Shown one piece after another: positions 1 to 35,847 of a stretch of DNA of 36,651 nt. Source of the DNA: Octopus bimaculoides. Taxonomy: Eukaryota. The notes under the pieces were generated by a model. It was given only the letters and a program-made list of their open reading frames with translations, was not told the origin of the DNA and ran no database searches. Position 1 is the stretch's first letter; each line of letters starts with the position of its first letter. The stretch lies in assembly GCF_001194135.2 (NCBI RefSeq), contig NC_068993.1:40821425-40858075 (forward strand), in the 5' to 3' direction. The position numbers were made by a program, and so were the translations under genes.

Positions 1-66
1 AATTATTATGTTTTCTGTTTAGTTGATTTTGGTTTGTTTACCATTTAAAAAAAAAAAATCTATTTG

Positions 67-125
67 CTAATTTTCTTTTTGTTTCCAAATTTTATATAAT
101 CATCTCCTTCTTTTGACAGGTAAGC
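67..125 (+). other. Candidate recursive (ratchet) splice site: 3' acceptor directly fused to a 5' donor
   Basis: CTAAT branch-like motif at 67-71, T-rich tract, no AG from 23 to 117, then ...TTTTGACAG|GTAAGC with the junction at 119/120. Confidence 0.45.
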
Positions 126-199
126 TTTGTTTGTGAAGAATTAGTTGTCTGTAACTGCAGAATATTAGCATACATTAACAGTGATCCAAAATATTTGGT

Positions 200-249
200 T
201 TCTCTACTTACACCCTAGCCATACTAGTATGGTTGGGTGTAGTAGAGAA
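200..249. other. Near-perfect hairpin/palindrome, about 23 bp stem
   Basis: TTCTCTACTTACACCCTAGCCATAC-TA-GTATGGTTGGGTGTAGTAGAGAA pairs end to end with two single-T bulges (209, 216) and one G:T pair. Confidence 0.8.
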
Positions 250-738
250 TCTGTGAGTCAGTTGTAGTAGAAAGGAAGATTTTCTTTAGAGATAAAAAAT
301 AAGAAGTAAAAAAATAAAAAGCAGAAAGCCTTGATGCAAACTTGAAAACATTGCTTTAATTTTGATTATTAACAAGAAAATATAAATAACAGTTCCCCCT
401 TAAAGCTGTGCTAAAGCCATAAACAGAGCTCCATTCTTTGGAATGGATCCTGACTTAAGAGTTAGGGCAAAATGGAAATGGTATTACTCTGTCATTCACG
501 ATTATGGAATCATTTATTTCCATAATCTGTTATCAATTGATAAGGGTCTTTTACTTCAAAACATTTCACCTGTCATCAACTAGAATTTGAAAATGGAATT
601 GGTCTTTTGTCATTTTCGTTTAGTTTCATTTTTAAGTTAAACTTTATCATTCCATTTTTTTAAGGGAATTTTTTTTTTCCTTTCTCAAGAGACAATTGTT
701 TTTTGTAGTTTTCTTTTCTTTTTATTATTATTACTATT

Positions 739-987
739 AGGGTGGCAAGTTGGCAGAATCGTTAGCATGCTGGGCAGAAATGTTTCACAGCATTTTGTCC
801 GTCTTTACTTTCTGAGTTCAAATTCCACTGAGGTTGGCTTTGCTCTTCAACCTTTCGGGGTTGATAAATTAAGTAGCAGTTAAGTACTGGAGTCAATGTT
901 ATTGACCATCCCCCTCCCCTCAAATTCCAGGCATTGTGCCTATAGTAGAAAGGAGTATTTTTATTATTATCATTATTAATACTATTA

Positions 988-1048: not shown

Positions 1049-1700
1049 GTGATGAAAACTCACAGCATATTTTGCTGAGTATGATGAAAAGTGTCAGCTG
1101 TCCACAGCTAGCAGACTAAGGTGACACTTGTTCACTGGTCTTGCTCCAAGAACTCTATGAAGAATTCTTGCAGTTCCAAGCAATGTTAATTTTATAGATG
1201 TTCTACCTTCACACTTGCACCAGTCTTTTTTAGCCATGTTGGTAGTTGAGTACTGATACATCCAACTACATCAATTACTATTGATATCAAGTCTACTCTC
1301 CTCATCGACTGTATATATTATGTAGGTATGTGTTTGTGTATATGTCCTAATATGTACATGTGCATGTATGTAAGTATGTATTTTGTATATGTTAGAAAAT
1401 TATGTGAACATCAGTAAGAAGAGAAAGTCCCAGTAAACCAGTGCTCTCAACCAAAGCTACATTCTGTGCTATTTGTTCTGTCTGAATTACAGACACTTCC
1501 TTACCATTCGCATCATTGTAAATGCAGTAAAGCAATAATTGGTCCCATTGCAAACTTATAAACCAAAATGTAATTTTACAAAATTAATTAGTTCCTTCAT
1601 TATCATCAAGCTTTGGAACTGTTATTTGGGCTTTAGCTGGAGTATATTAGTGACTAGAAGAAACTTCTGAAAGTATTTCAAATTGTCACTTGTTAACCTT

Positions 1701-2002
1701 CATCATCATCATCACATCATCGTTTAACATCCGCTTTCCATGCTAGCATGGGTTGGACGATTTGACTGAGGACTGGCGAACTGGATGGCTGCACCAGGCT
1801 CCAATCTGATCTGGCAGAGTTTCTACAGCTGGATGCCCTTCCTGGCACCAACCACTCTGAGAGTGTAGTGGGTGTTTTTTACGTGCCACCTGCATAGGAG
1901 TCAGTCCAGCGGTGCTGGCAACTACCTCACTTGAATGTTTTGTTCACATGCCACCGACACAAGTGCCAGTAAGGCGACGCTAGTAACGATCACGCTCAAA
2001 TG
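1701..2002 (-). mobile_element. Family B retroelement 3' end (LINE-like, (GAT)n tail)
   Basis: (CAT)n then CGTTTAACATCCGCTTTCCATGCTAGCATGGG...CAGCTGGATGCCCTTCC, a block that recurs about 20 times in the window. Confidence 0.85.
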
Positions 2003-2159
2003 AACAGAATAACAACATCTCTGACATGGAATTCCTGAATAGTATGGTCTACATTTGGTACACTCTCATACCAGCATCATATTGATTTCTAAATAAATTC
2101 AGAAGCAGTCTGTAGATACCCCTAGATACTCTTTCTAATGCCAACCAGTTTACTAAAGC

Positions 2160-5400: not shown

Positions 5401-5570
5401 CACACTGTAAAGTGGTTGGCATTTGGAAAGGCATCCACCTGTGAAAACCGTGCCAAAACAGACACAGAAGTCTGGTGCAGGCTCCTGCCGAGCTAACTCC
5501 TGCCTAATCATCCAACCCATGCTAGCGTGGAAGGCAGAAGTTAAATGATGATGATGAGGATGATGATGAT
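5401..5570 (+). mobile_element. Family B 3' end
   Basis: GTGGTTGGCATTTGGAAAGGCATCCACCTGT...CATCCAACCCATGCTAGCGTGG...GTTAAATGATGATGATG. Confidence 0.75.
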
Positions 5571-5954: not shown

Positions 5955-6290
5955 CATCATCATTTAACATCTGTTTTCCATGCTGCCATGGGCTGGAAAG
6001 TTTGACAGATACTGACCAACTGAAGGGCTGTTCTGGCTCCCTGACTGTTTTGACATGGTTTCTACCACTGGATGCCCTTCCTAATGTTAACCACTTTACA
6101 GGGTGTACTTGGTGCTTCAAGAAGCACCAGTATGCATGCATTTTACATAGCACCAGCTCCTACGAGCCTGTGAGATTAAGGATGCTCAGCTGGAGAGCAT
6201 TGCAGGGTACGAGCCCGTATGCAAGGACAACCACACGATTACTTAGCTTGACATATCTTTTCAAGCACAGCAAACCACCAGGAGTCTTGA
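5955..6290 (-). mobile_element. Family B copy retaining a putative ORF C-terminus
   Basis: B tail block. The minus strand at about 6239-6280 reads WWFAVLEKICQAK*, similar to YAVLEKTC*VK* at 16451-16486 (+). Confidence 0.75.
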
Positions 6291-6340: not shown

Positions 6341-6533
6341 TGTACTCCAGGCACAAGGCCTGAAATTTTGGGGATGGGGGCAGCAGTCAATTAGATCGAC
6401 CCCAGTATGCAGCTGGTACTCATTTTATTGACCCCCAAAAGGATGAAAGTCAAAGTCAACCACGGCAGAATTTGAACTCAGAACATAAAGACAGACGCCC
6501 GGCGTGCTAACGTTTCTGCCAACTCACTGCCCT
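6341..6533 (-). mobile_element. Family A SINE, internally deleted
   Basis: GGCACAAGGCCTGAAATTT...GATCGACCCCAG...GGTACTCATTTTATTGACCCC..AAGGATGAAAG...AATTTGAACTCAG...TTCTGCCAACTC. Confidence 0.8.
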
Positions 6534-6829: not shown

Positions 6830-7095
6830 TTCCTTATCATCATTGTTGTCATCATAATTGCCATCGTCATAATTGTCATCGTCATCATTGTCATTGTCGT
6901 CATCATCTTCATTCCCTCTGTCACTACAGCCATTATCATCTTCACTGCCACCACCACCGTCATCATCATCATCACCACTACTACCATCATCGTTATCACC
7001 ACCACCACCATTACTACCACCACCATCACTACCACCACCACCATCATCACTACTACCACCATCATCACTACCACCACCACCATCACCACCGTTAT
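6830..7095. repeat. Mosaic triplet tract (ATC/ACC/GTC/ACT)n
   Basis: Directly visible; stop-free in several frames only because of the triplet register. Confidence 0.9.
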
Positions 7096-8512: not shown

Positions 8513-8521
8513 TATATATGT

Positions 8522-8732
8522 ATACTCTTTACTCTTTTACTTGTTTCAGTCATTTGACTGCGGCCATGCTGGAGCACCGCCTTTAGTCAAACAAATCGAC
8601 CCCAGGACTTATTCTTTGTAAGCCTAGTACTTAATCTATCAGTCTATTTTGCCGAACCACTAAGTTACGGGGACATAAACACACCGGCATCGGTTGTCAA
8701 GCGATGCTGAAGGGACAAGCATCGACACACAA

Positions 8733-8783
<51 letters not shown>

Positions 8784-8880
8784 TACGACGGGCTTCTTTC
8801 AGTTTCCGTCTACCAAATCCACTCACAAGGCTTTGGTCGGCCCGAGGCTATAGTAGAAAACACTTGCCCAAGGTGCCACT
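8522..8880 (-). mobile_element. Family C SINE with internal (CA)/(TA)n, head truncated
   Basis: TACTCTTTTACTCTTTTACTTGTTTCAGTCATTTGACTGCGGCCATGCTGGAGCACC...(TA)n...TTTCAGTTTCCGTCTACCAAATCCACTCACAAGGC. Confidence 0.9.
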
Positions 8881-8899
8881 TCAGCTGGCACCACTTAAT

Positions 8900-9072
8900 A
8901 GCACCCAGCACACTGTAAGATGGTTAATGTTAGGAAGGGTACAAAGCTGTAGGAATGAAGCCAAATGATACTGGAACCAGGCATAGCTCTCCTGCTTGTT
9001 AGCTCCGGTCAAACCATCCAGCCCATACTGGTATGGGAAACAGACATTAAATGATGATGATGATGATGATGG
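8900..9072 (+). mobile_element. Family B 3' end, degenerate
   Basis: GTTAGGAAGGGTAC...GTCAAACCATCCAGCCCAT...ACATTAAATGATGATG. Confidence 0.65.
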
Positions 9073-9111
9073 ATAGATAGACAGATATATGTATATTTAT
9101 AGGTATATGTC

Positions 9112-9492: not shown

Positions 9493-10423
9493 NNNNNNNN
9501 NNNNNNNNNNNNNNNNNNNNNNNNNNNNNNNNNNNNNNNNNNNNNNNNNNNNNNNNNNNNNNNNNNNNNNNNNNNNNNNNNNNNNNNNNNNNNNNNNNNN
9601 NNNNNNNNNNNNNNNNNNNNNNNNNNNNNNNNNNNNNNNNNNNNNNNNNNNNNNNNNNNNNNNNNNNNNNNNNNNNNNNNNNNNNNNNNNNNNNNNNNNN
9701 NNNNNNNNNNNNNNNNNNNNNNNNNNNNNNNNNNNNNNNNNNNNNNNNNNNNNNNNNNNNNNNNNNNNNNNNNNNNNNNNNNNNNNNNNNNNNNNNNNNN
9801 NNNNNNNNNNNNNNNNNNNNNNNNNNNNNNNNNNNNNNNNNNNNNNNNNNNNNNNNNNNNNNNNNNNNNNNNNNNNNNNNNNNNNNNNNNNNNNNNNNNN
9901 NNNNNNNNNNNNNNNNNNNNNNNNNNNNNNNNNNNNNNNNNNNNNNNNNNNNNNNNNNNNNNNNNNNNNNNNNNNNNNNNNNNNNNNNNNNNNNNNNNNN
10001 NNNNNNNNNNNNNNNNNNNNNNNNNNNNNNNNNNNNNNNNNNNNNNNNNNNNNNNNNNNNNNNNNNNNNNNNNNNNNNNNNNNNNNNNNNNNNNNNNNNN
10101 NNNNNNNNNNNNNNNNNNNNNNNNNNNNNNNNNNNNNNNNNNNNNNNNNNNNNNNNNNNNNNNNNNNNNNNNNNNNNNNNNNNNNNNNNNNNNNNNNNNN
10201 NNNNNNNNNNNNNNNNNNNNNNNNNNNNNNNNNNNNNNNNNNNNNNNNNNNNNNNNNNNNNNNNNNNNNNNNNNNNNNNNNNNNNNNNNNNNNNNNNNNN
10301 NNNNNNNNNNNNNNNNNNNNNNNNNNNNNNNNNNNNNNNNNNNNNNNNNNNNNNNNNNNNNNNNNNNNNNNNNNNNNNNNNNNNNNNNNNNNNNNNNNNN
10401 NNNNNNNNNNNNNNNNNNNNNNN
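9493..10423. other. Assembly gap
   Basis: N run, 931 nt. Confidence 1.
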
Positions 10424-13829: not shown

Positions 13830-14031
13830 CCGCCTGACTGGCCTTCGTGCGGGTGACACGTAAAAGCACCCACTACACTCTCTGAGTGGTTATCGTTAGG
13901 AAGGGCATCCAGCTGTAGAAACTCTGCCAAATCAGATTGGAGCCTGGTGCAGCCATCCGGTTTCACCAGTCCTCAGTCAAATCGTCCAACTCATGCTAGC
14001 ATGGAAAGCGGACGTTAAACAATGATGATGA
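13830..14031 (+). mobile_element. Family B 3' end
   Basis: GCCTGACTGG...AAAAGCACCCACTACACTC...AGGAAGGGCATCCAGCTGTAG...GGACGTTAAACAATGATG. Confidence 0.85.
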
Positions 14032-14037
14032 TATTTG

Positions 14038-14163: not shown

Positions 14164-14703
14164 NNNNNNNNNNNNNNNNNNNNNNNNNNNNNNNNNNNNN
14201 NNNNNNNNNNNNNNNNNNNNNNNNNNNNNNNNNNNNNNNNNNNNNNNNNNNNNNNNNNNNNNNNNNNNNNNNNNNNNNNNNNNNNNNNNNNNNNNNNNNN
14301 NNNNNNNNNNNNNNNNNNNNNNNNNNNNNNNNNNNNNNNNNNNNNNNNNNNNNNNNNNNNNNNNNNNNNNNNNNNNNNNNNNNNNNNNNNNNNNNNNNNN
14401 NNNNNNNNNNNNNNNNNNNNNNNNNNNNNNNNNNNNNNNNNNNNNNNNNNNNNNNNNNNNNNNNNNNNNNNNNNNNNNNNNNNNNNNNNNNNNNNNNNNN
14501 NNNNNNNNNNNNNNNNNNNNNNNNNNNNNNNNNNNNNNNNNNNNNNNNNNNNNNNNNNNNNNNNNNNNNNNNNNNNNNNNNNNNNNNNNNNNNNNNNNNN
14601 NNNNNNNNNNNNNNNNNNNNNNNNNNNNNNNNNNNNNNNNNNNNNNNNNNNNNNNNNNNNNNNNNNNNNNNNNNNNNNNNNNNNNNNNNNNNNNNNNNNN
14701 NNN
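14164..14703. other. Assembly gap
   Basis: N run, 540 nt. Confidence 1.
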
Positions 14704-14801
14704 TATGAGCCTGGTGTAGCCATCCGGTTGCACCAGTCCTCAGTCAAATCGTCCAACCCATGCTAGCATGGAAAGCGGACGTTAAACGATGATGATGATG
14801 A

Positions 14802-14805
<4 letters not shown>
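14704..14805 (+). mobile_element. Family B tail
   Basis: GAGCCTGGTGTAGCC...CATGCTAGCATGGAAAGCGGACGTTAAACGATGATG. Confidence 0.85.
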
Positions 14806-16429: not shown

Positions 16430-16803
16430 TACCCTTCAATCGTCGGGTAATATGCTGTGCTTGAGAAGACATGTTAAGTCAAGTGAAATCGTTGTCATGG
16501 TCAATGCTAGTACTGCCTGACTGGCACCCGTGCCGGTGGCACATAAAATGCACCATTCAAGCATGGTCAATGCCAGTGCTGCCTGACTGGCTCTCGTACC
16601 AGTGGTACATAAAAAGCACCATGTGAGCATGGTTGATGCAAGTGCTGCCTGACTGGCCTCCGTGCCAGTGGCATGTAAAAAGCACCCACTACACTCTTGG
16701 AGTGGTTGACATTAGGAAGAGCATCCAGCTGTAGAAACCTTGCCAGACCAGACTGGAGCCTGGTGCAGCCTCCTGGCTTGCCAGTCCTCAGTCAAACCAT
16801 CCA
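16430..16803 (+). mobile_element. Family B copy with ORF C-terminus and 3 x 66-bp internal units
   Basis: Units start at 16496, 16562 and 16628 (CATGGT...GCCTGACTGG...AAAA.GCACC), followed by the standard B tail block. Confidence 0.85.
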
Positions 16804-16809
16804 AGTTAC

Positions 16810-17160: not shown

Positions 17161-17457
17161 NNNNNNNNNNNNNNNNNNNNNNNNNNNNNNNNNNNNNNNN
17201 NNNNNNNNNNNNNNNNNNNNNNNNNNNNNNNNNNNNNNNNNNNNNNNNNNNNNNNNNNNNNNNNNNNNNNNNNNNNNNNNNNNNNNNNNNNNNNNNNNNN
17301 NNNNNNNNNNNNNNNNNNNNNNNNNNNNNNNNNNNNNNNNNNNNNNNNNNNNNNNNNNNNNNNNNNNNNNNNNNNNNNNNNNNNNNNNNNNNNNNNNNNN
17401 NNNNNNNNNNNNNNNNNNNNNNNNNNNNNNNNNNNNNNNNNNNNNNNNNNNNNNNNN
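17161..17457. other. Assembly gap
   Basis: N run, 297 nt. Confidence 1.
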
Positions 17458-17931
17458 GGTCTTAAACTTAGCTGCTGCTGTTCTCCAACGTTCAAATGTT
17501 TCCTATTCTGGACATTTATGCAGCAGCTGGCAACCTCAATACTGCTACGTCTTATCTCAGAATTGGCATTGTGTGGTCGAGTAAAAATAAAAGAAAGTTA
17601 TCATAAATTTCATTGAGCACTGTAAAGTATTATTTATCTAAATATCTATATACATACATATCTATGTATATCAATCTATCTACCTAGCTATCTATTTGTC
17701 TATCTTTTCTCTCTCTCTGTATCTCTATCTCTCTGTTTATGCATATATATATATATATATATATATCCACTATATCAGAAATCTACAATGGTTCCATAAC
17801 TCCCATCTCAGCTATATGACCTTGAAGCCCTGATAATTCGTTAGAGCACTTAACCAGTGTACCTAGTCATTTAGATCACCTGTGAACTAAACCCCACTAT
17901 TTTGTGTATATATATATATATATATATATAT

Positions 17932-18142
17932 ACTTTTATCACTCTTTTACTTGTTTCAGTCATTTGGCTACGCCCATGCTGGAGCACCACTTTTAGTCGA
18001 ACAAATTACCCCTAGGACTTATTCGTTGTAAGCCTAGTACATATTCCATCGGTCTCTTGTGCCAAACCACTAAGTTATGGGGATGTAAACACACTAACAT
18101 TGGTTGTCAAGCGATGGTGGGATCACAAACACAGACACGCAA

Positions 18143-18185
<43 letters not shown>

Positions 18186-18310
18186 CATACATACATACAT
18201 ACATACACACACACACATGACAGTCTTCTTTCAGTTTCTATCTACCAAATCCACTCACAAGGCTTTGGTTGGCCTGAGGTTATAGTAGAAGACACTTGCT
18301 CAAGGTGCCG
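17932..18310 (-). mobile_element. Family C SINE with (TA)(TACA)(CA) insert
   Basis: Full C tail and body, as at 8522-8880. Confidence 0.9.
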
Positions 18311-18366
18311 NNNNNNNNNNNNNNNNNNNNNNNNNNNNNNNNNNNNNNNNNNNNNNNNNNNNNNNN
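18311..18366. other. Assembly gap
   Basis: N run, 56 nt. Confidence 1.
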
Positions 18367-18407
<41 letters not shown>

Positions 18408-18596
18408 CATACATACATACATACATACACACACACACATGACAGTCTTCTTTCAGTTTCTATCTACCAAATCCACTCACAAGGCTTTGGTTGGCCTGAG
18501 GTTATAGTAGAAGACACTTGCTCAAGGTGCCGCGCAGTGGTACTGAACCCGGAACCATGTGATTGTGAAGCAAGCTTCTTACCACACAGCCACTCT
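18367..18596 (-). mobile_element. Family C 5' half (probably the same copy as 17932-18310, duplicated by assembly)
   Basis: 18367-18531 appears identical to about 18146-18310, then completes the head ...TACTGAACCCGGAACCATG...TTACCACACAGCCACT. Confidence 0.8.
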
Positions 18597-22510: not shown

Positions 22511-22567
22511 NNNNNNNNNNNNNNNNNNNNNNNNNNNNNNNNNNNNNNNNNNNNNNNNNNNNNNNNN
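22511..22567. other. Assembly gap
   Basis: N run, 57 nt; followed by a short family C tail fragment (22568-22622). Confidence 1.
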
Positions 22568-22625
22568 TAACTGCAAGCATGCTGGAGCACCACCTTAAAG
22601 GGTGTTAGTCGAAGAAATCAACATT

Positions 22626-22990
22626 TGAGGGTGGTCATTGCCAGTGCCGCCGCACTGTCTCCCATGCAGGTAGCACGTAAAAATACCTTTTCAGCGTGGT
22701 CATTGCTAGTGCTGCCGGACTGGCTCCCATGCAGGTAGCACGTAAAAACACCTTTTGAGTGTGGACGTTGCCAGAACCACCTGACTGGCCCTCATTCTGG
22801 TGGCACATAAAAGCACCCACTACACACTCAGAGTGGTTGGCATTAGGAAGGGCATCCAGCTGTAGAAACTTTGCCACGTCAAATTGAGCCTGGTGCAGCC
22901 TCTGGTTCACCAGTCCTCAGTCAAACTGTCCAACCCATGCCAGCATGGAAAGCAGACGTTAAACGACGATGATGTTGATGATGATGATGA
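22626..22990 (+). mobile_element. Family B copy with 3 x 65-bp internal units
   Basis: Units start at 22631, 22696 and 22761 (GTGG.C.TTGC.AG), followed by the B tail and (GAT)n. Confidence 0.85.
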
Positions 22991-23177
22991 TTATTATCAT
23001 CATTTTAGTGTAAAATGGAATAAGCTGAACAAGAGGTTACATGTGTGATAAGGAGTCATTGAAGAGGTCACGGGATGTGCAATGAAAGAACTTTGACAAA
23101 GAAACTAAATAGCAAGAAGGCTGAAGTGAAAACGAGATGTAGTGTACGTGTGTTTAACTGGCAAAATGTACACATCC

Positions 23178-23366
23178 TATGCTGGTGCCCTGTAAAAATC
23201 ACTCAGGCTACTCTGTGGGGTTGTGGGTGTTAGGAAGGGCACCCAGCCATAAAAAAACTGTGCGAAAACAGACACAGAAGTCTGGTGCAGTCTTCTACCT
23301 GGCAAGCTCCTGTCAAAGCCATGCCAGCCTGGAAGGTGGATGTTAAACGATGATGGTGATGATGAT
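23178..23366 (+). mobile_element. Family B 3' end
   Basis: GTTAGGAAGGGCACCCAGCC...AAAACAGACACAGAAGTCTGGTGCAG...GGATGTTAAACGATGATG. Confidence 0.7.
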
Positions 23367-23802: not shown

Positions 23803-24041
23803 ACTTTTATTCTTTTACTTGTTTCAGTCATTTGCCTGCGACCATGCTGGAGCACCACCTTGATGGGTTTTAGTCAAACAAATCGACCCCAGAACTTACT
23901 TCTTAAGCCTAGTACTTATTCTATTGGCCTGTTTTGCCAAACTGCTAAGTTACAGTGATGTAAACACACCAACACCGGTTGCCAAGCAGTGATGTGTGGA
24001 CAAACAGACATACACAGATATATATATAGAGAGAGAGACAA

Positions 24042-24080
<39 letters not shown>

Positions 24081-24180
24081 CGACAGGCTTTTTTCAGTTT
24101 GGTCAACCCGGGGCTATAGTAGAAGACACTTGCTCCAGGTGTCACACAGTGGGACTGAACCTGGATCCATGTGGTTGGAA
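23803..24180 (-). mobile_element. Family C SINE, near full length
   Basis: C tail, (TA)(GA)(CA)(TA) insert, head with GGGACTGAACC B-box; internal deletion in the 5' body. Confidence 0.85.
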
Positions 24181-24392: not shown

Positions 24393-24517
24393 NNNNNNNN
24401 NNNNNNNNNNNNNNNNNNNNNNNNNNNNNNNNNNNNNNNNNNNNNNNNNNNNNNNNNNNNNNNNNNNNNNNNNNNNNNNNNNNNNNNNNNNNNNNNNNNN
24501 NNNNNNNNNNNNNNNNN
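24393..24517. other. Assembly gap
   Basis: N run, 125 nt. Confidence 1.
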
Positions 24518-26240: not shown

Positions 26241-26499
26241 AGAAGAATAAGCACTTACACACATGCACGTACATGTACGATATTTTCTGATATTCTTTTA
26301 CTTGTTTCAGTCATTTGGCTGTGGTCATGCTGGAGCACTGCCTTTAGTCGAACACATCAACCCCAGGACTTATTCTTCGTAAGCCCAGTACTTATTCTTT
26401 CGGAATCTTTTGCTGAACCACTAAGTTACGGGGACATAAACACACTAACATCAGTTGTCAAGTGATGGTGGGGCGGGGCACAAACACAGACACACAAAT

Positions 26500-26530
<31 letters not shown>

Positions 26531-26899
26531 NNNNNNNNNNNNNNNNNNNNNNNNNNNNNNNNNNNNNNNNNNNNNNNNNNNNNNNNNNNNNNNNNNNNNN
26601 NNNNNNNNNNNNNNNNNNNNNNNNNNNNNNNNNNNNNNNNNNNNNNNNNNNNNNNNNNNNNNNNNNNNNNNNNNNNNNNNNNNNNNNNNNNNNNNNNNNN
26701 NNNNNNNNNNNNNNNNNNNNNNNNNNNNNNNNNNNNNNNNNNNNNNNNNNNNNNNNNNNNNNNNNNNNNNNNNNNNNNNNNNNNNNNNNNNNNNNNNNNN
26801 NNNNNNNNNNNNNNNNNNNNNNNNNNNNNNNNNNNNNNNNNNNNNNNNNNNNNNNNNNNNNNNNNNNNNNNNNNNNNNNNNNNNNNNNNNNNNNNNNNN
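26531..26899. other. Assembly gap
   Basis: N run, 369 nt. Confidence 1.
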
Positions 26900-27050
26900 A
26901 TGATGATGATGACAGGCTTCTTTCATTTTTCATCTACCAGATCCACTCACAAGGCTTTGGTTGGCCCGAGGTTATAGTAGAAGATACTTCCCCAACGTGC
27001 AATACAGTGGGACTGAACCCAGGACCATGTGGTTGGGAAGCAAGCTTCTT

Positions 27051-27282
27051 ATATCTTTATTGCCCACAAGGGGCTAAACATGGAGGGGACAAACAAGGAC
27101 AGACAAAGGAATTAAGTCGATTACATCGACCCCAGTGCATAACTGGTACTTAATTTATCGACTCCGAAAGGATGAAAGGCAAAGTCGACCTCAGCGGAAT
27201 TTGAACTCAAAACGTAGCGGCAGACGAAATACCGCTAGGCATTTCGCCCCACGTGCTATTGTTTCTGCCAGCTCGCCGCCTT
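27051..27282 (-). mobile_element. Family A SINE, alternative-tail subfamily, CpG-rich and apparently young
   Basis: A body (ATCGACCCCAG...GGTACTTAATTTATCGAC...AATTTGAACTC...TTCTGCCAGCTCGCCGCC) with a different 3' end (TTTATTGCCCACAAGGGGCTAAAC). Confidence 0.85.
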
Positions 27283-29652: not shown

Positions 29653-29743
29653 TACATAGATACATTCATATGCATATGCATACATACATTCATAGATAGC
29701 TAGATAGATCAATTGATATGTATGTATATCAATATATATATAT

Positions 29744-29968
29744 ATTCTTTTATTTGTTTACTTGTTTCTGTCATTTGACTGGGGCCATGCTGGAGCACCA
29801 CCTTAAACGGTTTTTTAGGCGAAGAAATTGACTCCAGGACTTGTCCTTTGTAAGCCTGGTATTATAAGTCTCTTTTGCCAAACCACAAAGTTACAGAGAT
29901 GTAAACACACCAACATTGGTTGTCAAGAGGTGGTGGAGGAACAAACATAGACACAAAGACTCACACAC

Positions 29969-30013
<45 letters not shown>

Positions 30014-30138
30014 CACACAACAGGCTTCTTTCAGTTTCTGTCTATCAAATCCACTCACAAGGCTTTGGTCGGTGCCATGCAGTGGGGCTGAACCCAGAAC
30101 CATGTGGCTGGGAAGCAAGCTACTTACCACACAGCCAC
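29744..30138 (-). mobile_element. Family C SINE with internal (TA)n and a short deletion
   Basis: C tail to head (TACTTACCACACAGCCAC); GGTCGG joined directly to TGCCATGC. Confidence 0.9.
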
Positions 30139-30510: not shown

Positions 30511-30668
30511 GTAACTTAGTGGTCCAGCAAAAGTGACCCATAGAATAAGTACTAGGCTTACAAAGAATAAAGTCCTGGGGTCAATATTTCTTCAGCTAAA
30601 ACACCCTTTAAGACAGTACCCTTGCATGGCCGCAGTCAAATGACTGAAACAACTAAAAGAATGAAAGA

Positions 30669-30670
<2 letters not shown>
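30511..30670 (+). mobile_element. Family C 3' half
   Basis: GTAACTTAGTGGTCC...AATAAGTACTAGGCTTACAAAGAAT...GCAGTCAAATGACTGAAACAA. Confidence 0.85.
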
Positions 30671-30711
<41 letters not shown>

Positions 30712-30714
<3 letters not shown>

Positions 30715-31282
30715 TCATCATCATCATCATCATCATTGTTTAACGTCCGCTTTCCATGCTAGCATGCGTTGGACGATTTGACTGAGGACTGGTGAAACCA
30801 GATGGCAACACCAGGCTCCAATCTGATTTGCAGAGTTTCTACAGCTGGATGCCCTTCCTAACACCAACCACTCTGAGAGTGTAGTAGGTGCTTTTATGTG
30901 CCACTGGCACGAAGGCCTGTCAGGCGGTACTGGCAACGGCCACACTCAAATGGTGTATTTTATGTGCCACCCGCACAAGAGCCTATCCAGGGGCACTGGC
31001 AACGATCTTGCTCGAAAGTCCTTGCACATGCCACAGGCACAAGTGCCAGAAAGGCGATGCTGGGCACAGGTGCCATCCCGATTTCGCTTTTGCTTGCCCG
31101 AATAAGTCTTTGCAAGCTGAGTTTCGTGTCCAATGAAGGAGACGACGTTGGCATGGGTGCCAGTCGTCGAATTTAGTTCAGCTTCGATTTCACTTGCCTC
31201 AACAGGTCTTCGCAAGCGGAGTTTAGTGTCCAAAGAAGGAAAGGTACGCATAAGTGGGTTGGCTACACCCCTGGCAGAGGCC
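30712..31282 (-). mobile_element. Long family B copy with two types of internal repeat
   Basis: B tail, ~65-bp units, and a further unit repeated at 100-bp spacing (GTCCAA.GAAGGA at 31128 and 31228). Confidence 0.85.
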
Positions 31283-31303
31283 TTATATATATCATTAGAA
31301 AAT

Positions 31304-31609
31304 CATTCGAGCGAGGTCGTTGCCAGTGCCGTTGGACTGGCTCCCGTGCAGGTGGCACATAAAAAACACCTTTTTAAGTGTGGCCGTTGCCAGTACTGTG
31401 TGATTGACCCTTGTGCTGGTGGCGCATAAAAGCACCTACTATACTCTCAGAGTGGTTGGCATTAGGAAGGGCATCCAGTTGTAGAAACTCTGCCAAATCA
31501 GATTGGAGCTTGGTGCAGCCTGCTGGCTTACCAGTCCTCAGTCAAATCATCCAACCCATGCTAGCATGGAAAGTGGACGTTAAACGATGATGATGATGAT
31601 GAGGATGAT
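31304..31609 (+). mobile_element. Family B copy with 2 internal units, head-to-head with the previous copy
   Basis: Units at 31313 and 31380; B tail and (GAT)n. Confidence 0.85.
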
Positions 31610-32024: not shown

Positions 32025-32200
32025 TCATCATTGTCATCACCATTTAATGTCTGTTTTTCATGCTTGCTTGGGTTAGACATTTTGACAGGATCCAGCAAAC
32101 AGCTGAGTTGTGCTAAGCTCCTGTATCAGGTTTGGCGTGGTTTCTATAGCTGGATGCCCTTCCTAATGCCAATCATTTTACAATGAGCACTGGTAGTGTT
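32025..32200 (-). mobile_element. Family B 3' end
   Basis: CATCACCATTTAATGTCTG...TTTCTATAGCTGGATGCCCTTCCTAATGCC. Confidence 0.7.
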
Positions 32201-32381: not shown

Positions 32382-32436
32382 AAGATGAGTGGGAGAAGCT
32401 GGGAAGAAGATGAGTGGGAGAAGCTGGGAAGAAGAT
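32382..32436. repeat. Perfect 25-bp tandem duplication
   Basis: AAGATGAGTGGGAGAAGCTGGGAAG twice, plus AAGAT. Confidence 0.95.
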
Positions 32437-33207: not shown

Positions 33208-33448
33208 GGTCACGGTGTATATGAACGAGTGTATGTGTTTGCATGTACACTTACACTGCTCTATAATGCTATTAAATAAAAATTACCATTCCACAAAACA
33301 TCTCTGCCATATCACAGATAGCAAGTCTGTGATGTGTATAACAGTAGACAGGCAGAATGTGTGTTCCAGACAACTTGGAATATCATTTGTGAAGCTCTGC
33401 TAGTATTACCTGCCGCTCAGGTAGCTGTTGCCACTATTACCATTTTTA

Positions 33449-33683
33449 AAGGTAGCAAGCTGGCAGAATCGTTAGCACGCTGGGTGAAATGCTAAGCGGT
33501 ATTTTGCCCATCGTGACGTTTTGAGTTCAAATTCCACCAAGGTCAACTTTGCCTTTCATCCTTTCAGGGGATCAATAAATTAAGTACCAGTTGTGTACTG
33601 GGGTTTATGTAATCGACTTAACCCCTCCCCGCAAAATTTCAGGCCTTGTGCCTATGGTAGAAAGGATTATTATTATTATTATT
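33449..33683 (+). mobile_element. Family A SINE, full length
   Basis: GGTAGCAAGCTGGCAGAATCGTTAGCAC...GAGTTCAAATTCC...GTAGAAAGG(ATT)n. Confidence 0.9.
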
Positions 33684-33903
33684 AAGGTGGCAAACTGGTA
33701 AATCATTCGCATGCTGGGCGAAATGCTTAGCGGTATTTTGCCTGTCGCAACCTTTTGAGTTCAAATTCCGCTGAGGTCAACTTTGCCTTTCATTCTTTCA
33801 GGGTCAATAAATTAAGTACCAGTTGTGTACTGGGGTTGATGTAATCGACTTCATCCCTCCCTGCAAAATTTCAGGCCTTGTGCTTATAGTAGAAAGGATT
33901 ATT
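33684..33903 (+). mobile_element. Family A SINE, full length, directly after the tail of the previous copy
   Basis: AAGGTGGCAAACTGG...GAGTTCAAATTCC...GTAGAAAGGATTATT. Confidence 0.9.
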
Positions 33904-34969: not shown

Positions 34970-35847
34970 CTACTCTTGTTGTTGTTGTGATGGTGGTGGC
35001 GGTGGTCGTGGCTGTCGTCATCGTCGTCATCACAGTTGCATCATTTATTGTGGTGTTGGTGGTTGTGATTGTTGTGTTTTTTTTTGTATTTATTGTAGTT
35101 GTTGCTGTGGCATCAACCTCATGATGGTGGTGGTGGTGGTGGCGGTGGTGGTCTTGGTGGCGGCAGCAGTACTGGCAGTGACAGTGGTGGTCATGGCACT
35201 GTTGATGATGATGATTTGATCAGGATGATGATGATGTGATAGTGGTGGTGGTGGTGGTGAATTTGTTAATGATGATGAGGAGGAGGAGGAGGAGGATTCT
35301 CTTCATCATCATCATCATTGTCATTCTGGTCACTGTTGATATCATCATTGTAGTCATCATCACCATCATTGTCTGCATCAGTCTTCACTGTTGCCACCAT
35401 TACCACGTTCACCTATATTGTTATCTTCATCACCTCACCTCCATCGTCAGCGTTGTCATCATAATCATCACCAGTATCCTCACCATCACCACCTCCACAG
35501 TTTTCGTCTGCACCATCGTCATCGTCATCGTCATCATCAGCAGCAGCGTCAGCGGCAGCACTGCTTTCATTACCATGATGATTACTATCATCACCACCAC
35601 TATTGTCATTATCATCATCATCATGATCGTCATCAGCAGCACCAACTCCATTACCATGACAACTGCTATCATCACCACCACTATTGTCATCAACATCATC
35701 ATCACCACCACTATTGTCATCAACATCATCATCACCACCATCATCATCACCATCATCATCATCATCACCATCATCATCACCACCATCATCACCATCATCA
35801 TCATCACCATCATCACCATCATCACCATCATCATCACCATCATCACT
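34970..35847. repeat. Long mosaic triplet tract: (GGT/GAT/GTT)n switching to (CAT/CAC)n
   Basis: Directly visible; source of the poly-His, poly-Met and poly-Ile ORFs in the track. Confidence 0.9.

What the first reader, a model, noticed from the sequence alone, without database searches (positions are those of the whole stretch)
67..258. Textbook recursive splice site with a downstream poison cryptic exon
Seen: branch-like CTAAT (67-71), a ~95-nt AG-free T-rich zone, CAG|GTAAGC at 119/120, and a second donor CT|GTGAGT at 252/253. The 133-nt segment 120-252 is not a multiple of 3 and has stops in all three frames. Known: this is the architecture of Drosophila ratchet points and vertebrate RS-exons, where an acceptor regenerates a donor and a cryptic, often PTC-containing exon provides exon definition. 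Inference: the window lies in a very long + strand intron that is removed stepwise. I am not aware of recursive splicing being described in cephalopods, but I have not searched.
Basis: partly seen in the sequence, partly recalled or inferred. Interest (0 to 1): 0.7.

Follow-up and report, generated by a model that had tools for sequence, protein, structure and literature searches.

The report
Candidate recursive splice site, unproven
A strong back-to-back "end of intron / start of intron" signal really sits at position 119/120 and is rarer than chance for this window, but only the sequence could be tested, so whether the cell uses it to remove a long intron in steps is still open.

Summary
The AGGTAAG core alone is at chance level: 3 copies in the window, about 3.4 expected. 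The full juxtaposed acceptor and donor is a clear outlier. It scores 24.0 bits on a rough splice-site matrix, against 14.9 for the next best site on either strand. Shuffles give 0.003-0.007 such sites per window, and reversed-sequence controls reach 20.8 bits. The supporting details are weak: 66% of random 133-nt segments here have stops in all three frames, and a GTRAGT donor within 300 nt occurs 15% of the time. The site is not "textbook" for flies. It lacks the TT at -5/-6 seen in 196 of 197 Drosophila ratchet points, and its putative cryptic exon is 133 nt against about 50 nt. No coding exon was recognised anywhere in the window, so it is intronic or intergenic. Transcription, strand, host gene, organism and conservation could not be tested. 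My estimate is about 0.4 for a recursive or RS-exon-type site, about 0.4 for a fortuitous motif, and the rest for an ordinary non-coding exon edge or an element carried by a repeat. If it is real, it extends a known mechanism to a new clade.

The parts
67..71 (+). Branch-point-like CTAAT. The A at 70 lies 49 nt upstream of the acceptor G at 119.
   Evidence: CTRAY occurs in an equivalent position at 13% of random sites, so this is weak support.
23..117 (+). AG-free zone of 95 nt upstream of the acceptor. It is T-rich.
   Evidence: Only 1.2% of AG dinucleotides in the window have an upstream AG-free gap this long. This is partly a by-product of the local T-richness.
100..115 (+). Polypyrimidine tract ATCATCTCCTTCTTTT (14 of 16 pyrimidines), followed by purines G and A at -5 and -4.
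   Evidence: the tract scores 6.2 bits, in the top 1% of window positions. The -5/-6 positions read G,T and not T,T.
117..119 (+). Acceptor CAG.
   Evidence: The acceptor scores 13.2 bits and ranks 4th among + strand acceptor-like sites.
120..125 (+). Juxtaposed donor GTAAGC. After splicing to 120 this would be the regenerated 5' splice site.
   Evidence: CAG|GTAAGC scores 12.2 bits, the joint-highest donor score in the window on either strand. It matches the consensus CAG|GTAAGT at 8 of 9 positions.
120..252 (+). Putative cryptic RS-exon of 133 nt, with stops in all three frames.
   Evidence: The property is uninformative, since 66% of random 133-mers share it. No other copy of this sequence lies in the window, and no Pfam or protein homology was found.
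253..258 (+). Downstream donor GTGAGT in the context TCT|GTGAGT.
   Evidence: 5.0 bits, and the only donor of at least 4 bits within 400 nt downstream of 120. By chance a GTRAGT lies within 30-300 nt at 15% of positions.

Best explanation
[quoted passage not shown] If the + strand is transcribed as part of a long intron, it would most likely act as a recursive splice site of the exon-definition (RS-exon) type.

The inferred steps are as follows. U2AF and U2 bind the tract at 100-115 and a branch point in the AG-free zone, for example CTAAT at 67-71. U1 at GTGAGT (253) helps define the 133-nt segment 120-252 as an exon. The upstream exon is spliced to 120. This rebuilds a donor (exon end + GTAAGC) that is much stronger than the one at 253, so a second reaction removes the segment together with the rest of the intron. 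The mRNA keeps no trace. Use of 253 instead would insert 133 nt that shift the frame and carry stops.

Shown: the motifs, their strength, and their rarity in this window. Inferred: transcription, strand, use by the spliceosome, and every splicing step.
For: The composite motif scores 24.0 bits against 14.9 for the next best site in the window. Shuffles expect 0.003-0.007 per window, and reversed controls reach at most 20.8 bits. The site combines the joint-best donor in the window with a top-1% pyrimidine tract, a 95-nt AG-free zone (1.2% of AGs) and a single downstream GTGAGT donor.

The donor hierarchy (12.2 vs 5.0 bits) matches the rule that the stronger donor decides skipping of the cryptic exon (PMC8605326). 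Fly cryptic RS-exons are likewise out of frame and poorly conserved.

No coding exon was recognised in the window, which fits a long intron. Pfam found nothing on 86 unique ORFs, and there were no hits among 5.8 billion proteins.

Published counts show such motifs are 4-22 times enriched on the sense strand of >50-kb introns in all five invertebrates tested, including sea urchin. The antisense (chance) rate is about 0.1 per 100 kb (PMC2773006). A strong motif inside a sense-strand long intron of an invertebrate is therefore usually not chance.
Against: There is no evidence of transcription, strand, host gene, or intron length upstream, because the site lies 119 nt from the window edge. Conservation could not be examined at all.

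The site has G at -5, where 99.5% of Drosophila ratchet points have TT at -5/-6 (10.1101/006163). The putative RS-exon is 133 nt against about 50 nt in flies, and its donor is weak in exon context (TCT|, 5.0 bits).

The + strand is pyrimidine-rich throughout, which raises the chance rate on this strand. A genome of a few gigabases would hold hundreds of equally good chance matches. No mollusc was in the published enrichment survey, and large repeat-rich vertebrate genomes show no enrichment. My scoring matrices are approximations from memory and are not species-specific.
Confidence: 0.4

Rival explanations
1. The motif is fortuitous. An AT- and pyrimidine-rich stretch of non-coding DNA happens to carry CAG|GTAAGC after a T-rich tract. 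It is not transcribed in this orientation, or the spliceosome ignores it, and it has never been under selection.
For: The core AGGTAAG occurs at the frequency composition predicts: 3 seen, about 3.4 expected. All ancillary features are common by chance at 13-66%. The + strand has four times more long pyrimidine runs than the - strand.

Reversed-sequence controls reach 20.8 bits. At 0.003-0.03 chance sites per 34 kb, a gigabase-scale genome holds hundreds of such sites. The motif was picked out by eye from a whole window. Nothing shows transcription or conservation. The fly-specific TT rule is not met.
Against: The site is 9 bits above every other AGGT in the real window and 3 bits above the best control. 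It joins the best donor with a top-1% tract, a long AG-free zone and a lone downstream consensus donor. Together these are expected in well under 1% of windows.
Confidence: 0.4
2. It is an ordinary, non-recursive exon edge. Either 120-252 is a real non-coding exon (UTR, lncRNA or alternative exon) that happens to start with GTAAG, or 119 is the end of a non-coding upstream exon and GTAAGC is its normal donor.
For: The acceptor (13.2 bits) and the donor (12.2 bits) are each as strong as real splice sites. A consensus GTGAGT follows 133 nt later. Hundreds of annotated human exons begin with a donor-like sequence (PMC6224609 abstract).
Against: Segment 120-252 has stops in all frames and no homologue. 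An exon ending at 119 would have to start at or before 23, because there is no AG in 23-117. It would be 79% A+T with stops in all frames and would contain an A12 run. GTAAG at an exon start is itself a roughly 1-in-600 coincidence by composition.
Confidence: 0.13
3. The splice-like motif is carried by an interspersed repeat, for example a T-rich end of a retroelement next to the A12 run at 47-58. It would then recur in many copies across the genome and act at most as a sporadic cryptic exon.
For: The window is 23% intra-window repeats. An A12 run at 47-58 could be a retroelement tail. SINE copies in the window carry strong acceptor-like sites, for example at 33568 and 33802 with 13.3 bits.
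Against: Bases 1-695 have no second copy anywhere in the window. Only low-complexity matches were found. ORFs of this stretch have no homologues.
Confidence: 0.07

Closest known systems
Drosophila intronic ratchet points (Ubx, kuz, Bx; Hatton 1998, Burnette 2005, Duff 2015, Joseph 2018/2021)
   Same: Both have a juxtaposed acceptor|donor with a long pyrimidine tract and a GTAAG donor. Both have a downstream donor that would define a cryptic exon. In both the regenerated donor is stronger than the cryptic-exon donor, and the cryptic exon is out of frame.
   Different: This site lacks the near-universal TT at -5/-6 and has G,T with purines at -5 and -4. Its cryptic exon would be 133 nt rather than about 50 nt. 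Location in a long intron, conservation and RNA evidence are all unknown.
Vertebrate RS-exons in long neuronal genes (Sibley 2015; reviewed in PMC5126111)
   Same: Both have a YAG|GT junction and exon definition through a downstream 5' splice site. In both, the regenerated and downstream donors compete, and inclusion would bring in premature stop codons.
   Different: The vertebrate sites were defined by junction reads, saw-tooth coverage and conservation, and none of these is available here. The host gene and intron length are unknown.
Annotated RS-exons repressed by the exon junction complex (Blazquez 2018, PMC6224609)
   Same: In both, an exon begins with a functional donor-like sequence.
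   Different: Those are expressed and mostly constitutive exons. Here 120-252 has no coding potential and no evidence of expression.
Pseudoexons and decoy exons in long introns (e.g. DMD pseudoexons, PMC7175933; zero-length exon of alpha-tropomyosin, Grellscheid and Smith 2006)
   Same: Both are intronic segments flanked by good splice-site matches that are normally absent from mRNA.
   Different: Most pseudoexons do not start with a strong donor. The GTAAGC at 120 is what sets this one apart.

Membership tests
Drosophila-type intronic ratchet point | [quoted passage not shown] | tested here: met
   TCATCTCCTTCTTTTGACAG|GTAAGC scores 24.0 bits. Its normalised score of 0.896 is the best in the window.
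Drosophila-type intronic ratchet point | TT at positions -5 and -6 (196 of 197 ratchet points; 10.1101/006163) | tested here: not met
   Position -6 is T and -5 is G (TTTTGACAG|). The rule may be specific to the fly lineage.
Drosophila-type intronic ratchet point | Lies on the sense strand of a long intron (over 11 kb in flies), kilobases away from both exons | not testable with these tools
   No annotation could be reached. Only a partial hint exists: no coding exon was recognised in 36.6 kb. The site is 119 nt from the window start, so nothing upstream is visible.
Drosophila-type intronic ratchet point | Short cryptic RS-exon (about 50 nt) closed by a downstream donor that is weaker than the ratchet-point donor | tested here: inconclusive
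   The only downstream donor is at +133 nt (TCT|GTGAGT, 5.0 bits) and there is none within 30-100 nt. The strength order of 12.2 vs 5.0 bits is as expected.
Drosophila-type intronic ratchet point | Strong conservation of the acceptor|donor core with a poorly conserved cryptic exon | not testable with these tools
   No orthologous sequence could be reached.
Drosophila-type intronic ratchet point | Junction reads to the site, lariats from the site, and saw-tooth coverage in total RNA | not testable with these tools
   No RNA data were available.
Vertebrate RS-exon | YAG|GT(R)AG junction with a downstream 5' splice site that defines the RS-exon | tested here: met
   CAG|GTAAG at 119/120 and GTGAGT at 253.
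Vertebrate RS-exon | Inclusion of the RS-exon introduces a premature stop codon | tested here: inconclusive
   Stops occur in all three frames and 133 is not a multiple of 3. However, 66% of random 133-mers in the window behave the same way, and the reading frame of the host gene is unknown.
Vertebrate RS-exon | Located in very long introns of long genes, with conservation above matched AGGT controls | not testable with these tools
   No annotation or orthologues were available.

The most novel reading that the evidence does not exclude
This would be the first recursive splice site described in a cephalopod, and in any lophotrochozoan. It would be of the exon-definition type, with a long (133-nt) cryptic exon and without the fly TT(-5/-6) signature. 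That would suggest RS-exon-mediated stepwise intron removal is ancestral to bilaterians and is used in the very long introns of cephalopod genes.
Probability: 0.35. Interest if true: 0.45.

Novelty: new member of a known kind. Interest (0 to 1): 0.3.

Why it matters
Recursive splicing is documented by RNA evidence in insects and vertebrates. Motif enrichment also points to it in sea urchin (PMC2773006). A full-text search of the held library found no paper that treats recursive splicing in cephalopods or octopus.

Cephalopods combine very large, repeat-rich genomes with complex nervous systems and heavy RNA-level regulation, so how they remove long introns is a fair question. A validated site would fill a phylogenetic gap. 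It would also show whether the fly-type or the vertebrate-type signal is used.

One unvalidated motif does not answer this. The mechanism itself would not be new, and specialists would not be surprised given the enrichment already seen in other invertebrates.

Tried and rejected
1. Gene context through protein handles. Eleven window ORFs were looked up by exact sequence and none is on record. Pfam on 86 unique stop-to-stop ORFs of at least 40 aa gave only one chance-level low-complexity hit. A homology search with about 4.9 kaa of concatenated unique ORFs from 1-33072 gave no hit. So there was no exon to anchor a host gene.

2. Fetching annotated cephalopod loci through a repeat-derived ORF profile, in order to count sense against antisense motifs. 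Only one 1.7-kb contig came back. The plan was dropped and the organism stays unverified.

3. An exact 30-mer across the junction was searched in JGI metagenome contigs and gave no match.

4. Strand of transcription from composition. AATAAA is 33 on + against 47 on -. GTRAGT is 12 against 33. Pyrimidine runs are 37 against 9. By my own arithmetic on the base counts, the AATAAA and pyrimidine-run asymmetries are about what the 52.3% pyrimidine skew predicts. The GTRAGT asymmetry is larger than that skew predicts and is only partly accounted for by GT microsatellites and one repeat family. None of this was accepted as evidence of strand.

5. Repeat orientation bias. Copies lie in both orientations, so no inference was possible.

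6. An exon scan for acceptor-donor pairs enclosing an open frame produced nothing convincing.

7. Rfam and tRNA scans found nothing at the site.

8. A search for a repeat sequence string in papers, to name the organism, gave no hit.

Full report
**Observation.**
- CTAAT is at 67-71.
- The nearest upstream AG is at 21-22, which leaves 23-117 (95 nt) free of AG.
- The first 119 bases are 51% T.
- The junction reads TCATCTCCTTCTTTTGACAG|GTAAGC, with the cut between 119 and 120.
- TCT|GTGAGT follows, with its cut between 252 and 253.
- The 133-nt segment 120-252 has stop codons in all three frames.

**What kind of DNA this is.** The window is a scaffolded eukaryotic draft.
- It holds seven N gaps totalling 2,375 bases.
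- It has 45 tandem-repeat rows, most of them microsatellites.
- At least three interspersed repeat families cover 23% of it.
- Rfam and tRNA scans found nothing.

This fits a repeat-rich invertebrate genome, but I could not verify that it is a cephalopod. The only outside relative of any window repeat was one 1.7-kb contig from a sequencing run whose organism is not given.

**Chance, core motif.** AGGTAAG occurs three times on the two strands. Base composition predicts about 3.4 (the expectation is my arithmetic from the base counts). The heptamer alone means nothing.

**Chance, whole motif.** I scored every AGGT on both strands with a 16-nt pyrimidine-tract term, the YAG, and a 9-nt donor matrix. 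The matrices are approximations of metazoan splice-site frequencies written from memory. They are adequate for ranking but not for absolute claims.
- Site 120 scores 24.0 bits, and the next best of 184 sites scores 14.9.
- It carries the joint-highest donor score in the window (12.2 bits) and a tract score in the top 1% of all positions.
- Dinucleotide-preserving shuffles in 200-nt or 1-kb blocks give 0.003-0.007 sites of at least 24 bits per window, with a mean window maximum of 17.5 bits.
- Reversed, non-complemented copies of the window keep its low-complexity structure and reach 20.8 and 18.8 bits.
- Multiplying the real frequencies of the two halves gives 0.01-0.04.

The composite is therefore a genuine outlier at the scale of one window, at roughly 0.5-3%. 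A genome of a few gigabases would still contain hundreds of equally good chance matches.

**Chance, supporting details.** The other items in the finding add little.
- CTRAY falls in the branch-point range at 13% of random positions.
- GTRAGT falls 30-300 nt downstream at 15%.
- 66% of random 133-nt segments have stops in all three frames, and two lengths in three are not multiples of 3.
- The 95-nt AG-free zone is rarer (1.2% of AGs) but is tied to the local T-richness.
- The + strand as a whole has 37 pyrimidine runs of at least 12 nt against 9 on the - strand. By my arithmetic, its 52.3% pyrimidine content predicts about 3:1.

The "poison exon" property is the default state of non-coding DNA here and is not evidence.

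**Surroundings.** Bases 1-695 have no second copy in the window, so the site is not inside any repeat family visible here. I looked for a host gene and found none.
- Eleven ORFs are absent from the protein collection.
- Pfam finds nothing in 86 unique stop-to-stop ORFs of at least 40 aa.
- A search of 5.8 billion protein clusters with about 4.9 kaa of concatenated unique ORFs from 1-33072 returned no hit.
- A scan for acceptor-donor pairs enclosing an open frame gave nothing convincing.

The window is therefore intronic or intergenic. Exons shorter than about 40 codons or lying in repeats could have been missed. The strand of transcription could not be inferred. Most compositional asymmetries follow from the pyrimidine skew or are partly due to microsatellites, and repeat copies lie in both orientations. 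The site is 119 nt from the window edge, so nothing upstream can be seen.

**Mechanism if the site is used.** The inferred sequence of events is this.
1. The tract at 100-115 and a branch point in the AG-free zone recruit U2AF and U2.
2. The GTGAGT at 253 recruits U1 and helps define 120-252 as an exon.
3. The upstream exon is joined to 120, which recreates a donor (exon end + GTAAGC).
4. That donor is far stronger than the one at 253 (12.2 vs 5.0 bits), so it wins and the 133 nt leave with the rest of the intron.

This is the competition rule shown by mutagenesis of Bx and kuz in flies, where weakening the ratchet-point donor switches the outcome to cryptic-exon inclusion (PMC8605326). Every step here is inference. 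Only the motifs are shown.

**Comparison with known systems.** The site has the general form of Drosophila ratchet points and vertebrate RS-exons, but it is not a textbook fly site.
- 196 of 197 fly ratchet points have TT at -5/-6 (10.1101/006163). This site has G at -5 and A at -4.
- Fly cryptic RS-exons are about 50 nt. Here the only usable donor is 133 nt away.
- In these respects it looks more like the looser vertebrate YAG|GT type described in PMC5126111.
- The features that actually define membership could not be tested: location in a long sense-strand intron, conservation of the core, and junction and lariat reads.

**Base rates.** Shepard et al. (PMC2773006) counted strong juxtaposed motifs in introns over 50 kb.
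- The antisense (chance) rate is about 0.07-0.12 per 100 kb in all 13 animals except mosquito, which had none on the antisense strand.
- The sense-strand rate is 0.5-2.2 per 100 kb in sea urchin, fly, mosquito, bee and beetle, which is 4-22 times higher.
- In eight vertebrates the ratio is about 1.
- No mollusc was included.

If this window lies in a sense-strand long intron of an animal that behaves like the other invertebrates, a motif this strong is more likely real than not. If the animal behaves like vertebrates, or the window is intergenic, it is most likely chance.

I weighed these scenarios together with the missing TT (against) and the lone downstream donor (for). I put about 0.4 on a recursive or RS-exon-type site, about 0.4 on a fortuitous motif, about 0.13 on an ordinary non-coding exon edge, and the rest on a repeat-borne element. 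These are judgements and not computed posteriors.

**Novelty and verdict.** Full-text searches found no paper that treats recursive splicing in cephalopods or octopus. A validated site would be new for the clade. It would still be a new member of a known kind, and an expected one given the invertebrate enrichment data.

The interpretation cannot be decided from sequence alone. The decisive data are annotation mapping, total-RNA junction and lariat reads, orthologue alignment, and a sense/antisense motif census in octopus long introns.

Noticed in passing
window 722-930 (+), 6360-6496 (-), 27116-27280 (-), 33435-33635 and 33667-33867 (+, a 232-bp unit in tandem): About 200-bp SINE-like element in five copies, 74-78% identical to each other. 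ARAGORN calls no tRNA in it. The + oriented copies at 33568 and 33802 carry strong acceptor-like sites (CTTTCAG|GG, 13.3 bits), so this family could supply cryptic 3' splice sites when inserted in the sense orientation.
   Followed up: partly
window 1694-2003, 5402-5569, 5955-6117, 8882-9075, 13848-14032, 14707-14805, 16668-16804, 22689-22993, 23175-23366, 30715-31016, 31303-31608, 32025-32164: The most abundant interspersed repeat in the window, about 300 bp, present in both orientations at 68-94% identity. Some copies hold internal 65-66-bp tandem units (16496-16686, 22624-22817). A profile of its longest ORF found one relative only, on a 1.7-kb Logan contig of run SRR11869384, about 70-72% identical at the DNA level.
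   Followed up: partly
window 8513-8879, 17921-18309, 18381-18531, 23806-24145, 26291-27000, 29733-30072, 30511-30681: A third repeat family of about 370 bp with an internal AT/TA-type microsatellite. All copies but one are in the + orientation. Two copies at 17921-18531 are separated by a 56-N gap, which may be an assembly artefact.
   Followed up: no
whole window: The + strand is pyrimidine-rich, with T over A by 4.4% and C over G by 5%. It has 37 pyrimidine runs of at least 12 nt against 9 on the other strand, spread over the full 36 kb. GTRAGT hexamers are 12 on + against 33 on -, only partly due to GT microsatellites and one repeat. Whether this reflects transcription of one strand is unknown.
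   Followed up: partly
window 9493-10423, 14164-14703, 17161-17457, 18311-18366, 22511-22567, 24393-24517, 26531-26899: Seven N gaps totalling 2,375 bases, several of them inside or next to repeats and microsatellites. Any feature spanning them, including possible small exons, is invisible.
   Followed up: no
window 6837-7090 and 35524-35845: Long imperfect trinucleotide arrays (CAC/CAT/TCA type) give 100-200-codon open frames of His-, Val-, Ile- and Thr-rich low-complexity peptide on both strands. These are ORF artefacts and not genes.
   Followed up: no
window 32382-32436: A perfect 25-bp unit (AAGATGAGTGGGAGAAGCTGGGAAG) is repeated 2.2 times at 100% identity. This looks like a very recent local duplication.
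   Followed up: no
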